Shown here piece after piece: positions 8,712-9,388 of a stretch of DNA of 43,531 nucleotides (the stretch's first letter is position 1; each line of letters begins with the position of its first letter). The notes under the pieces were generated by a model. That model had not been told where the DNA came from. It saw only the letters and a program-made list of their open reading frames with translations, and ran no database searches. The DNA lies in assembly GCF_001194135.2 (NCBI RefSeq), contig NC_068994.1, positions 54,655,593 to 54,699,123 of the forward strand, written 5' to 3'. A program made the position numbers and the translations under genes. This DNA is from Octopus bimaculoides (Eukaryota).

Positions 8712-9388
8712 AATATCGGTTTCAAATTATGCCACAAGGTCAGTAATTTTAGGGGAATGAGTAAGTTGATTACATTGACCCCCCNNNNNNNNNNGTGCTC
8801 ACCTGGTACTTATTTTATCGACCTCGAAAGAGTGAAAGGCAAAGTCGACTTCGGCGGAATTTGAACTCAAATGTAAAAACAGACAAAATGCTAGAAATAA
8901 TATATTTCTAAATCTCTCGGAGAGATTTATACAGTAACAGCACGATAAAGTGATAGCATGTTGTCAACTTAATGTGAAAGTCCCATAAAAGGGAAGAATG
9001 CTACTGTTATTTAGCCCTAGGAAACACCGTTTCCTGTTGGACTTGACACATTTCCTGTGTCCGTATGTTTCAAACTGGAGACAAGCACCTCCACTCAGCA
9101 AAACCAGTATCCAGAGACTAGTTTCAGAGTCATTGCTCATCATCAGTCTGGAGTAGCATGGCTTGCTAGCTGTCGATGCCTATCTGCCTTTGAAAGCATA
9201 CATATTTCAAGTGAACAGGAAATATGTCAAGACCAACAGGAAACGGTGTTTCCTGGGGCTAAATAACAGTAGCATTCTTCCCTTTTATGGGACTGTCACA
9301 TTAAGTTGACAACATACTATCACTTTAGACAAAATGCTACTAAGCATTTTGCCCGGCGTGCTAACATTTCTGCCAGGTCACCACCTTA
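8712..9388 (-). mobile_element. tRNA-derived SINE, family B, split by the insertion at 8894-9326
   Basis: 8712-8893 and 9340-9388 join into one continuous copy (GGCAAAGTCGACTTCGGCGGAATTTGAACTCA...CTAAGCATTTTGCCCGGCGTGCTAAC...TCTGCCAG) that aligns with copies at 23925 and 37345. Confidence 0.85.
8894..9326. mobile_element. Unclassified asymmetric fold-back element, copy 1 (433 bp), 13 bp TSD
   Basis: Inverted arms 8947-9058 and 9215-9326 (112 bp, 5 mismatches by manual count). Unpaired 53 bp left tail with two hairpins. Flanking direct repeat AGACAAAATGCTA at 8881-8893 and 9327-9339. Confidence 0.9.

What the first reader, a model, noticed from the sequence alone, without database searches (positions are those of the whole stretch)
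8881..9339. Asymmetric fold-back mobile element with 13 bp TSD that fits no standard class
Seen: a 433 bp insert with 112 bp inverted arms. One arm reaches the element end (...CTATCACTTT); the other is capped by an unpaired 53 bp tail. A perfect 13 bp duplication flanks it, and it splits a SINE cleanly, so both ends are unambiguous. A second copy at 29645 has the same ends at an unrelated target. Known: cut-and-paste MITEs have symmetric terminal IRs and TSDs of about 2-11 bp; Helentron/HINE elements have asymmetric IRs plus a terminal hairpin but normally no TSD; 12-13 bp TSDs are typical of target-primed reverse transcription (R4, PLE, SINEs). Inference: either a hairpin-RNA retroposon lacking a tRNA head and poly(A) tail, or a Helentron-like element with unusual integration chemistry. 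It may be an undescribed non-autonomous family.
Basis: partly seen in the sequence, partly recalled or inferred. Interest (0 to 1): 0.72.

Follow-up and report, generated by a model that had tools for sequence, protein, structure and literature searches.

The report
Penelope-type retroelement insertion with hammerhead ribozyme
The odd "lopsided hairpin" insert is real, but its shape (an inverted copy, a one-sided short tail, a variable target duplication and a hammerhead ribozyme motif) is the known signature of insertions made by Penelope-like retroelements, so it is most likely an ordinary small member of that class in an octopus genome.

Summary
A 433-bp insert (8894-9326) sits between perfect 13-bp duplications and splits an octopod SINE cleanly. 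It has 112-bp near-perfect inverted arms and a 53-bp unpaired tail at one end. A second copy (29645-29916) has identical ends at an unrelated target.

The claim that it fits no standard class is not supported. Published Penelope-like element (PLE) insertions show the same anatomy: a head-to-head inverted, 5'-truncated copy, a short tail at one end only, and TSDs of variable length.

On the minus strand, at the tip of the hairpin, the element carries a minimal type-I hammerhead motif (9110-9152). The motif has traits reported for PLE ribozymes: an extra base after A9, a G10.1-C11.1 pair and a palindromic helix III (ACUAGU). My descriptor finds three such motifs in the window and none in 300 shuffles, a reversed decoy or 2519 permuted-box controls.

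The two copies have different junctions between the direct and inverted parts. This suggests the inverted arm is made anew at each integration rather than inherited.

No autonomous partner and no further copies could be retrieved, so assignment to a particular PLE family is untested. Best reading: a short non-autonomous or 5'-truncated PLE unit, a new member of a known kind. Confidence about 0.7, modest interest.

The parts
8881..8893 (.). Target-site duplication of copy 1, left copy (AGACAAAATGCTA)
   Evidence: 13/13 identical to 9327-9339 (D2). Present only once in intact SINE copies.
8894..8946 (-). 53-nt tail. It is the 3' end of the unit on the sense (minus) strand, is absent from the inverted arm, and contains two small hairpins (8894-8908 and 8909-8929).
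   Evidence: Not part of the inverted repeat (I1). 10-bp perfect hairpin (I4). Hairpins predicted. 51/53 identical in copy 2. Corresponds to the PLE tail of the literature.
8947..9109 (-). Body of the direct (tail-bearing) unit, downstream of the ribozyme motif. The outer 112 nt (8947-9058) form one arm of the near-perfect inverted repeat.
   Evidence: The inverted arm of copy 2 follows this half up to 138 nt.
9110..9152 (-). Minimal type-I hammerhead ribozyme motif: UCCAGA-CUGAUGA-U-GAG(CAAUGA)CUC-U-GAA-ACUAGU-C|UCUGGA. The predicted cleavage is between 9116 and 9115.
   Evidence: Own descriptor gives 3 hits in the window and 0 in 300 shuffles. It gives 0 in a reversed decoy and 0 in 2519 permuted-box descriptors. 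Traits match PLE hammerheads as listed in PMC4209133. Not found by Rfam, but Rfam also misses the textbook motif at 8114-8159.
9153..9214 (-). Segment upstream of the ribozyme motif. It pairs imperfectly with 9059-9109, extending helix I to form the inner part of the hairpin.
   Evidence: The inner 156 nt fold at -52.4 kcal/mol (z = -4.2) as minus-strand RNA but only -39.5 kcal/mol (z = -1.8) as plus-strand RNA. It is diverged from the reverse complement of the other half, with a 9-nt indel.
9215..9326 (+). Inverted, tail-less, 5'-truncated copy of the outer 112 nt of the unit. It ends exactly at the body/tail boundary.
   Evidence: 96% complementary to 8947-9058 (I1). The four arms of the two copies are 92-97% alike, mostly through private changes, as expected if the arms were identical at insertion.
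9327..9339 (.). Target-site duplication of copy 1, right copy
   Evidence: D2.
8795..9390 (-). Host SINE interrupted by copy 1. The SINE parts are 8795-8893 and 9340 to about 9390.
   Evidence: Colinear alignment of the joined flanks with other SINE copies.
29633..29644 (.). Target-site duplication of copy 2, left copy (ATAATATCATTG)
   Evidence: 12/12 identical to 29918-29929, or 12/13 if extended by one base.
29645..29785 (-). Copy 2: tail (29645-29697) plus 88 nt of the direct unit (29698-29785). No ribozyme motif is present.
   Evidence: 95.7% identical to copy 1 positions 1-141. Alignment.
29779..29916 (+). Copy 2: inverted tail-less copy, 138 nt. It overlaps the direct part by the 7-nt microhomology TGTTTCC (29779-29785).
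   Evidence: 92.8% identical to the reverse complement of copy 1 positions 54-190, not to the inner right half of copy 1. Microhomology shown.
29918..29929 (.). Target-site duplication of copy 2, right copy

Best explanation
The two copies are insertion products of a Penelope-like retroelement (PLE). Each is either a short non-autonomous unit derived from a PLE pseudo-LTR or 3' region, or a heavily 5'-truncated copy of an autonomous PLE.

The sense strand is the minus strand of the window. The unit reads: upstream segment, minimal type-I hammerhead, about 220 nt of body, then a 53-nt tail.

The following mechanism is inferred from published PLE biochemistry. It is not shown here.
1. A PLE RT/GIY-YIG protein supplied in trans cuts both strands of an AT-rich target 12-13 bp apart, which gives the TSD.
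2. Reverse transcription starts at two alternative internal sites of the RNA. One cDNA includes the tail, and the other starts at the body/tail boundary and lacks it.
3. The two cDNAs end up head-to-head, producing a direct tail-bearing copy and an inverted tail-less copy.
4. The junction forms by snap-back self-priming on the unit's own imperfect hairpin (copy 1) or by a template switch or slippage at a 7-nt microhomology (copy 2).
5. The hammerhead would process the transcript. It probably acts only as a dimer, and may be decayed in this copy.
For: Shown here:
1. TSDs of 13 and 12(13) bp with precise, shared ends, and an empty site verified against other SINE copies.
2. The inverted arm stops exactly at the body/tail boundary in both copies, and the tail is at one end only.
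3. A hammerhead motif lies at 9110-9152 on the same strand on which the tail is 3'-terminal. It has an extra base after A9, a G10.1-C11.1 pair and a palindromic helix III (ACUAGU). The descriptor gives 3 hits in the window against 0 in 300 shuffles, 0 in a reversed decoy and 0 in 2519 permuted-box controls.
4. The inner hairpin is much more stable as minus-strand RNA (z = -4.2) than as plus-strand RNA (z = -1.8), which points to an RNA-level structure on that strand.
5. The inverted arm of copy 2 (138 nt) is copied from the tail-side half and is longer than its own direct part (88 nt). Its apex differs from that of copy 1 and shows a 7-nt microhomology. The four arms are about equally diverged, 92-97%.

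From the literature:
- PLE insertions often carry an inverted 5'-truncated copy and a 30-40 bp tail at only one end (PMC8557442). One example has an inverted pLTR, a 31-bp tail and a 9-bp TSD; other insertions in the same study have 8-10 bp TSDs, and palindromes occur at inverted junctions (PMC3846280).
- The tail is the sequence between two internal RT start sites, and the enzyme cuts and extends both target strands at AT-rich sites (PMC11167929).
- TSD length is variable.
- PLE pseudo-LTRs carry minimal hammerheads with exactly these traits (PMC4209133).
- Octopus genomes hold recently active Penelope families (PMC13282606).
Against: - No RT/GIY-YIG ORF lies in or near the element or anywhere in the window, and no autonomous PLE sharing its 3' end could be sought.
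- Only two copies are available.
- The tail is 53 nt, against the usual 30-40 nt.
- There is no tandem (pseudo-LTR) arrangement.
- Rfam hammerhead models do not score the motif even at E<=10.
- The motif has an unusual extra U between C11.1 and G12 and only a 3-bp helix II, so it may be catalytically dead.
- The same bases weakly resemble a C/D-box kink-turn.
- Copy 2 lacks the motif altogether.
Confidence: 0.7

Rival explanations
1. A SINE-like hairpin retroposon mobilised by a LINE (for example the RTE, CR1 or Dong/R4 families that are active in octopus). Under this reading the 53-nt tail with its stem-loop is a LINE-derived 3' recognition module.
For: TSDs of 12-13 bp are typical of LINE-type TPRT. 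The tail contains a perfect 10-bp stem-loop (I4), as stringent LINE 3' ends do. LINE RT fragments are present in the window.
Against: - There is no poly(A) or microsatellite 3' end.
- There is no tRNA-like head.
- Nothing else in the window shares the tail.
- LINE twin priming inverts a different, upstream part of the template. It does not duplicate the same 3' region, and it would not give the same tail-less boundary in two independent insertions (established knowledge of L1 twin priming).
- The hammerhead motif is unexplained by this reading.
Confidence: 0.12
2. A DNA-level element: a fold-back or MITE-type cut-and-paste transposon, or a Helentron/HINE-like rolling-circle element with unusual integration.
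For: It has long inverted arms and a small size.
Against: - The two termini (GAAATAATAT... and ...CTATCACTTT) are not inverted repeats of each other.
- A 12-13 bp TSD lies outside the 2-11 bp range of known DDE superfamilies, and Helitrons and Helentrons make no TSD (established knowledge).
- The folding is strand-asymmetric at the RNA level.
- The apex differs between copies.
Confidence: 0.05
3. A monomeric non-LTR retrozyme: a small hammerhead-bearing, highly self-paired RNA that normally amplifies as tandem repeats through circular RNA, here inserted as solo units.
For: It has a type-I hammerhead motif, a size within the 170-450 nt range, 40% GC and an extensively self-paired RNA. Retrozymes are reported to have TSDs longer than 4 bp and to be PLE derivatives (PMC7229834; bioRxiv 10.64898/2026.07.22.740005).
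Against: There is no tandem arrangement and only one ribozyme motif. The self-pairing of the outer 112 nt comes from a DNA-level inverted duplication rather than a rod-like unit. Copy 2 has no ribozyme. This reading overlaps with the best explanation and is not truly exclusive of it.
Confidence: 0.1
4. An assembly artefact of a short-read, gap-rich scaffold that produced a false palindrome.
For: The window has 15 N-gaps. PLE tandem/inverted structures are known to trouble short-read assemblies (PMC8557442).
Against: Two independent copies have identical ends, each with its own TSD. There is a clean empty-site reconstruction, and no gap lies inside either copy.
Confidence: 0.02

Closest known systems
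Endonuclease-containing Penelope-like elements (Penelope/Poseidon, Neptune and related clades): insertions with an inverted pseudo-LTR and a tail
   Same: Head-to-head inverted copy at the 5' side. A short extension at only one end. A TSD of variable length at AT-rich targets. A minimal type-I hammerhead on the sense strand. A variable direct/inverted junction with palindromes or microhomology. 5' truncation.
   Different: No RT/GIY-YIG ORF and no direct pseudo-LTR pair. The tail is 53 nt rather than 30-40 nt. The TSDs of 12-13 bp are longer than the 8-10 bp examples read here. Sequence relationship to any PLE is untested.
Metazoan non-LTR retrozymes (Cervera and de la Pena 2020)
   Same: A small, AT-rich, non-coding, highly self-paired unit with a type-I hammerhead whose helix III is a short palindrome. 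Probably PLE-dependent.
   Different: Retrozymes are tandem arrays with one ribozyme per unit. Here there are solitary insertions with an inverted partial duplicate and at most one ribozyme motif. The helix II and core spacing resemble the minimal PLE type rather than canonical retrozyme hammerheads.
Non-autonomous PLE derivatives and trans-mobilised pseudo-LTR cassettes (Adineta vaga Pen3a-NRPS; Chlamydomonas MRC1)
   Same: Show that pseudo-LTR and 3' sequences alone suffice for PLE-mediated integration with TSDs.
   Different: Those carry captured or internal sequence between direct pseudo-LTRs. This one is only one partial unit plus its inverted piece.
L1 twin-priming 5' inversions
   Same: A TPRT product whose 5' part is inverted. 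The TSD is of similar length.
   Different: Twin priming inverts a different segment without duplicating it and gives insertion-specific ends. Here the same 3' region is present twice, with a fixed tail-less boundary.

Membership tests
Penelope-like element (autonomous, EN+) | Single ORF encoding a PLE-type reverse transcriptase and a GIY-YIG endonuclease | tested here: not met
   The longest ORFs in the element are 48-69 aa. The one searched (59 aa) has no homologue. No PLE ORF is in the window; the only RT is a LINE RVT_1 fragment. The element can therefore be at most a non-autonomous or truncated derivative.
PLE insertion product / non-autonomous PLE derivative | Inverted 5'-truncated copy adjoining the direct copy (head-to-head) | tested here: met
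   Arms 8947-9058 / 9215-9326 at 96%. Copy 2 arms 29698-29785 / 29779-29916.
PLE insertion product / non-autonomous PLE derivative | Short tail extension present at only one end of the insertion | tested here: met
   A 53-nt tail at 8894-8946 and 29645-29697, absent from the other end in both copies. It is longer than the 30-40 bp quoted in the literature.
PLE insertion product / non-autonomous PLE derivative | TSD present, of variable length | tested here: met
   13 bp and 12 bp (13 with one mismatch). The empty site is verified for copy 1. Only two insertions were available.
PLE insertion product / non-autonomous PLE derivative | Minimal type-I hammerhead on the sense strand with a base between A9 and G10.1, a G10.1-C11.1 pair and a palindromic helix III | tested here: met
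   Motif at 9110-9152(-). Caveats: an extra U before G12, no Rfam hit, catalysis untested, and the motif is absent from copy 2.
PLE insertion product / non-autonomous PLE derivative | 3'-terminal sequence (pseudo-LTR and tail) shared with an autonomous PLE of the same genome | not testable with these tools
   No cephalopod genome collection is searchable by DNA here. Viral and metagenome scans were empty. Protein routes gave only one 21.7-kb O. sinensis locus, which has no copy.
PLE insertion product / non-autonomous PLE derivative | Variable 5' truncation among copies | tested here: inconclusive
   The direct part is 321 nt in copy 1 and 141 nt in copy 2. With two copies, a later slippage deletion at the TGTTTCC repeat cannot be excluded.
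Non-LTR retrozyme | Tandem repeats of a 150-450 bp unit, each with a type-I hammerhead | tested here: not met
   No tandem repeat in 8700-9500. There is a single motif in copy 1 and none in copy 2.
Non-LTR retrozyme | Expressed as unit-length circular RNA | not testable with these tools
   No transcriptome data are available.
MITE / cut-and-paste DNA transposon | Terminal inverted repeats at both extreme ends and a superfamily-specific TSD (2-11 bp) | tested here: not met
   The ends GAAATAATAT and AAAGTGATAG (reverse complement of the other end) do not match. The TSD is 12-13 bp.
Helentron / HINE | No target-site duplication; Rep/helicase-related ends | tested here: not met
   A perfect 13-bp TSD is verified by the empty site.
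SINE (LINE-dependent) | Pol III head (tRNA, 7SL or 5S) and a poly(A), microsatellite or LINE-derived 3' end | tested here: not met
   ARAGORN finds nothing and Rfam finds nothing. There is no simple-repeat tail. A LINE-derived tail could not be excluded without LINE consensus sequences.

The most novel reading that the evidence does not exclude
This may be more than debris of an autonomous PLE. It could be a dedicated non-coding parasite of octopus PLEs whose transcript is a long hairpin with a hammerhead at its tip. At each retrotransposition the cDNA would snap back on that hairpin and re-synthesise the outer arm up to the internal RT start site. The near-perfect outer arms would thus be regenerated every cycle while the inner stem evolves as RNA structure. 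That would make it a monomeric, hairpin-shaped counterpart of the tandem retrozymes, and possibly a source of hairpin-derived small RNAs.
Probability: 0.2. Interest if true: 0.55.

Novelty: new member of a known kind. Interest (0 to 1): 0.3.

Why it matters
PLE insertions are often mis-annotated as unknown repeats or MITEs because of their tandem/inverted structures and one-sided tails. This case shows how a puzzling asymmetric fold-back can be resolved by looking for the tail, the tail-less inverted copy and a minimal hammerhead.

Two points could be useful if confirmed on many copies:
- The two insertions have different direct/inverted junctions but identical outer ends. That is natural-history evidence for the two-start-site, both-strands integration model recently derived in vitro for a lizard PLE.
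- Octopus genomes would then be a place to study short PLE-dependent, ribozyme-bearing elements.

It also shows that Rfam hammerhead models miss PLE-type minimal hammerheads, so these are invisible to routine annotation.

Tried and rejected
- **Rfam.** There were no matches at gathering thresholds in the whole window. Permissive scans of the element and of the motif region gave no hammerhead hit, only sub-threshold C/D-box snoRNA, miRNA and Tombusvirus matches. I treat these as chance or as core-box resemblance. The C/D reading is rejected because only 12 nt separate the boxes and the scores are under half the gathering score. Rfam also misses the textbook minimal hammerhead at 8114-8159, so its silence is uninformative.
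- **Finding more copies.** All routes failed:
  - A protein search with the element's 59-aa ORF found nothing.
  - Exact-pattern scans of viral contigs and metagenome contigs were empty.
  - Searches with the window's LINE RT and with its O. sinensis relative returned only one octopus protein.
  - That protein's 21.7-kb locus has the SINE but no copy of the element.
  - An ENA contig (L002) is not octopod.
  - nhmmer with the unit found nothing further in the window or the loci.
- **Literature.** Supplementary files of the PLE and O. vulgaris repeat papers hold no sequences. Pyatkov 2004 and Evgen'ev 1997 are not held.
- **Copy 2 as a simple internal deletion of copy 1.** Rejected, because its inverted arm follows the tail-side half rather than copy 1's inner right half.
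- **The 156-nt centre as a perfect-palindrome remnant of the same age as the arms.** Rejected, because the arms are 96% alike while the centre aligns at only about 54-69%.

Full report
**1. The observation**

The region reads as described. A perfect 13-bp direct repeat, AGACAAAATGCTA, lies at 8881-8893 and 9327-9339 (D2). It brackets a 433-bp insert that begins GAAATAATATATTTC and ends CTATCACTTT.

The tool finds inverted arms at 8946-9058 and 9215-9327, 113 nt and 96% complementary (I1). That is 112 nt inside the element plus one fortuitous flanking base. The first 53 nt (8894-8946) have no partner at the other end and contain their own perfect 10-bp hairpin at 8909-8929 (I4).

Joining the two flanks with one copy of the 13-mer gives a sequence that aligns without interruption across the junction with other copies of a SINE:
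- 23982-24123 in the window, 79% over 143 nt, and 17078-17169;
- an Octopus sinensis locus fetched later, L001 16466-16615, 81% over 150 nt.

So this is a true insertion with a true 13-bp target duplication, and the window comes from an octopod.

A second copy at 29645-29916 (272 bp) has the same termini and a tail that is 51/53 identical. It is flanked by ATAATATCATTG on both sides, 12 bp perfect or 13 bp with one mismatch.

**2. Finer anatomy**

The 156 nt between the arms of copy 1 are not a free loop. A self reverse-complement alignment runs over the whole of 8947-9327 at 78%. nhmmer also aligns the unit to its own complement over about 260 nt. The arms are 96% alike, but the inner part aligns at only about 54% (gapped), about 69% over its best-aligned stretch, and has a 9-nt indel.

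As RNA, the inner 156 nt fold far better on the minus strand (-52.4 kcal/mol, z = -4.2) than on the plus strand (-39.5, z = -1.8). The whole element behaves the same way (-252.9 against -233.2 kcal/mol). This asymmetry, which arises from G-U pairs, points to a structure selected in an RNA of minus-strand sense. On that strand the tail is the 3' end.

**3. A hammerhead motif at the tip**

On the minus strand, 9152 to 9110 reads:

UCCAGA-CUGAUGA-U-GAG(CAAUGA)CUC-U-GAA-ACUAGU-C|UCUGGA

This has the elements of a type-I hammerhead:
- a 6-bp helix I;
- the CUGAUGA and GAA boxes;
- helix II closed by G10.1-C11.1;
- a single A-U helix III capped by CUAG, so that ACUAGU is a perfect palindrome able to form the dimeric helix III.

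I wrote a descriptor for this architecture. It finds three motifs in the window: this one, 8114-8159(-) and 20359-20406(+). It finds none in 300 block shuffles, none in the reversed window, and none with any of 2519 descriptors in which the two core boxes were permuted.

Features that the descriptor did not require are present in all three motifs. Each has a base between A9 and G10.1 and a palindromic or G-U quasi-palindromic helix III (ACUAGU, ACGU, ACAGUUGU). Cervera and de la Pena list these traits, together with the G10.1-C11.1 pair (which my descriptor did require), as emerging from PLE hammerheads (PMC4209133).

Rfam finds no hammerhead, even at E<=10 on a 96-nt stretch. It equally misses the textbook motif at 8114-8159, so this is a limit of the models.

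Caveats: the element's motif has an extra U between C11.1 and G12 and only a 3-bp helix II, so it may be inactive. The same bases give weak C/D-box-like hits (16.8 bits against a gathering score of 35).

**4. The two copies compared**

The four arms (two per copy) are 92-97% identical to one another, almost entirely through private substitutions. This is what is expected if each insertion started with identical arms and then decayed.

The inverted arm of copy 2 is 138 nt. Beyond position 113 it follows the tail-side half of copy 1 (92.8% to positions 54-190), not the inner right half of copy 1. Its direct part is only 88 nt plus the tail. The two parts overlap by the 7-nt microhomology TGTTTCC.

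Copy 2 is therefore not a simple deletion derivative of a copy-1-like sequence. The outer ends are fixed but the direct/inverted junction differs. The simplest reading is that the inverted arm is generated during integration.
- In copy 1 it continues the unit's own imperfect hairpin, which fits snap-back priming.
- In copy 2 it joins at a microhomology, either by a template switch or by later slippage inside a longer palindrome.

**5. Comparison with what is known**

The published anatomy of endonuclease-containing Penelope-like elements matches point by point.
- Insertions are 5'-truncated and often form partial tandems. [quoted passage not shown]
- In Adineta vaga an element bounded by inverted pseudo-LTRs has a 31-bp tail on one of them and a 9-bp TSD. 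Other insertions have 8- and 10-bp TSDs. Palindromes at the inverted junction are common and were interpreted as self-priming. Pseudo-LTRs alone suffice for mobilisation in trans (PMC3846280).
- In vitro, a lizard PLE protein cuts and extends both target strands at AT-rich sites and starts reverse transcription at two internal sites. The sequence between those sites is the tail (PMC11167929).
- TSD length is variable because the distance between the two cleavages varies.
- Octopus vulgaris has some 30 recently active Penelope families (PMC13282606).
- Metazoan retrozymes are small hammerhead-bearing, self-paired, AT-rich units now argued to be PLE derivatives. They are the other close relative (PMC7229834; bioRxiv 10.64898/2026.07.22.740005). 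They are tandem arrays, which this element is not.

**6. Rivals**

- A LINE-dependent SINE-like element is the main alternative. It would explain the TSD and perhaps the stem-loop tail. It would not explain the duplicated inverted arm with a fixed tail-less boundary, the missing simple-repeat end, the missing pol III head or the hammerhead.
- Cut-and-paste and Helentron readings fail on the non-complementary termini and on the verified 12-13 bp TSD.
- An assembly artefact is unlikely, given two copies with their own TSDs and no internal gaps.

**7. What could not be done**

No cephalopod genome is searchable by DNA with these tools. Protein, viral and metagenome routes yielded no further copy.

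Three things therefore remain untested: the sequence link to an autonomous PLE, the family-wide statistics of ends and TSDs, and conservation of the ribozyme. No PLE ORF lies in the window. Its coding remnants are a LINE RT at 41383-42306 and a mariner HTH at 35156-35434.

**8. Verdict**

The structure does not lie outside known classes: it is the hallmark of PLE integration.

I rate it a new member of a known kind. Confidence in the PLE reading is about 0.7, and interest is modest (0.3).

The most novel reading still open is a dedicated hairpin-shaped, ribozyme-tipped PLE parasite that regenerates its arms by snap-back priming. I give that a probability of about 0.2.

Using the O. vulgaris calibration quoted (JC distance 0.09 for about 25 My), arm divergences of about 4% in copy 1 and about 8% in copy 2 would date the insertions to roughly 5-11 My. 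This is inference only.

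Noticed in passing
window 8114-8159 (-): A textbook minimal type-I hammerhead: GACAC-CUGAUGA-A-GGCUGG...CAGCC-GAA-ACGU-U|GUGUU. It is unrelated in sequence to the element. It lies between an (AAT)n run and a 9-bp tandem (TGTAAATAA)n at 8024-8086, and is probably another short PLE- or retrozyme-type insertion in a microsatellite. 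Rfam misses it.
   Followed up: partly
window 20359-20406 (+): A third hammerhead motif: GUCU-CUGAUGA-A-GGGAUAU...AUAUCCC-A-GAA-ACAGUUGU-A|AGAC. It has a 7-bp helix II and a G-U quasi-palindromic helix III, and is flanked by (TA)n and (CA)n(TA)n. Like the element's motif, it has an extra base before G12.
   Followed up: partly
window 8795-8893 + 9340-~9390; 23982-24123; 17078-17169; 37432-37559; L001 5277-5842 and 16466-16794: Copies of one octopod SINE family, 65-83% alike. The family is shared with Octopus sinensis, which places the window in an Octopus-like genome.
   Followed up: partly
window 41383-42306 (+): A 307-aa ORF with an RVT_1 domain (LINE reverse transcriptase fragment). It is 79-84% identical at the DNA level to the O. 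sinensis LOC115227337 locus.
   Followed up: partly
window 35156-35434 (+) and 33199-33282 (+): A Mos1/mariner HTH_48 fragment. The same N-terminal peptide (MQLSDNTDIDLRKCINKLTLIFFSPLLQ) recurs about 2 kb upstream next to an N-gap, suggesting duplicated mariner remnants.
   Followed up: no
window 5590-6030 (+): A 146-aa ORF with a weak winged-helix hit (HTH_24, below cut-off). It is possibly another transposase N-terminus.
   Followed up: no
window 8957 / 9316 and 29708 / 29906: A criss-cross C/T difference at arm position 11. In copy 1 the tail-side arm has C and the inverted arm has T (as its reverse complement); copy 2 has the opposite. It gives a G-U pair on opposite strands in the two copies. 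Unexplained.
   Followed up: no
window, whole: There are 15 N-gaps (5380 N) and a very high load of (TA)n, (CA)n and related microsatellites. Most long ORFs are translated simple repeats.
   Followed up: no
window 9115-9149 (-): The hammerhead core region also resembles a C/D-box kink-turn (AUGAUGA ... CUGA with an AGACU/AGUCU stem). SNORD109A scores 16.8 bits against a gathering score of 35. The boxes are only 12 nt apart, too close for a snoRNA.
   Followed up: yes
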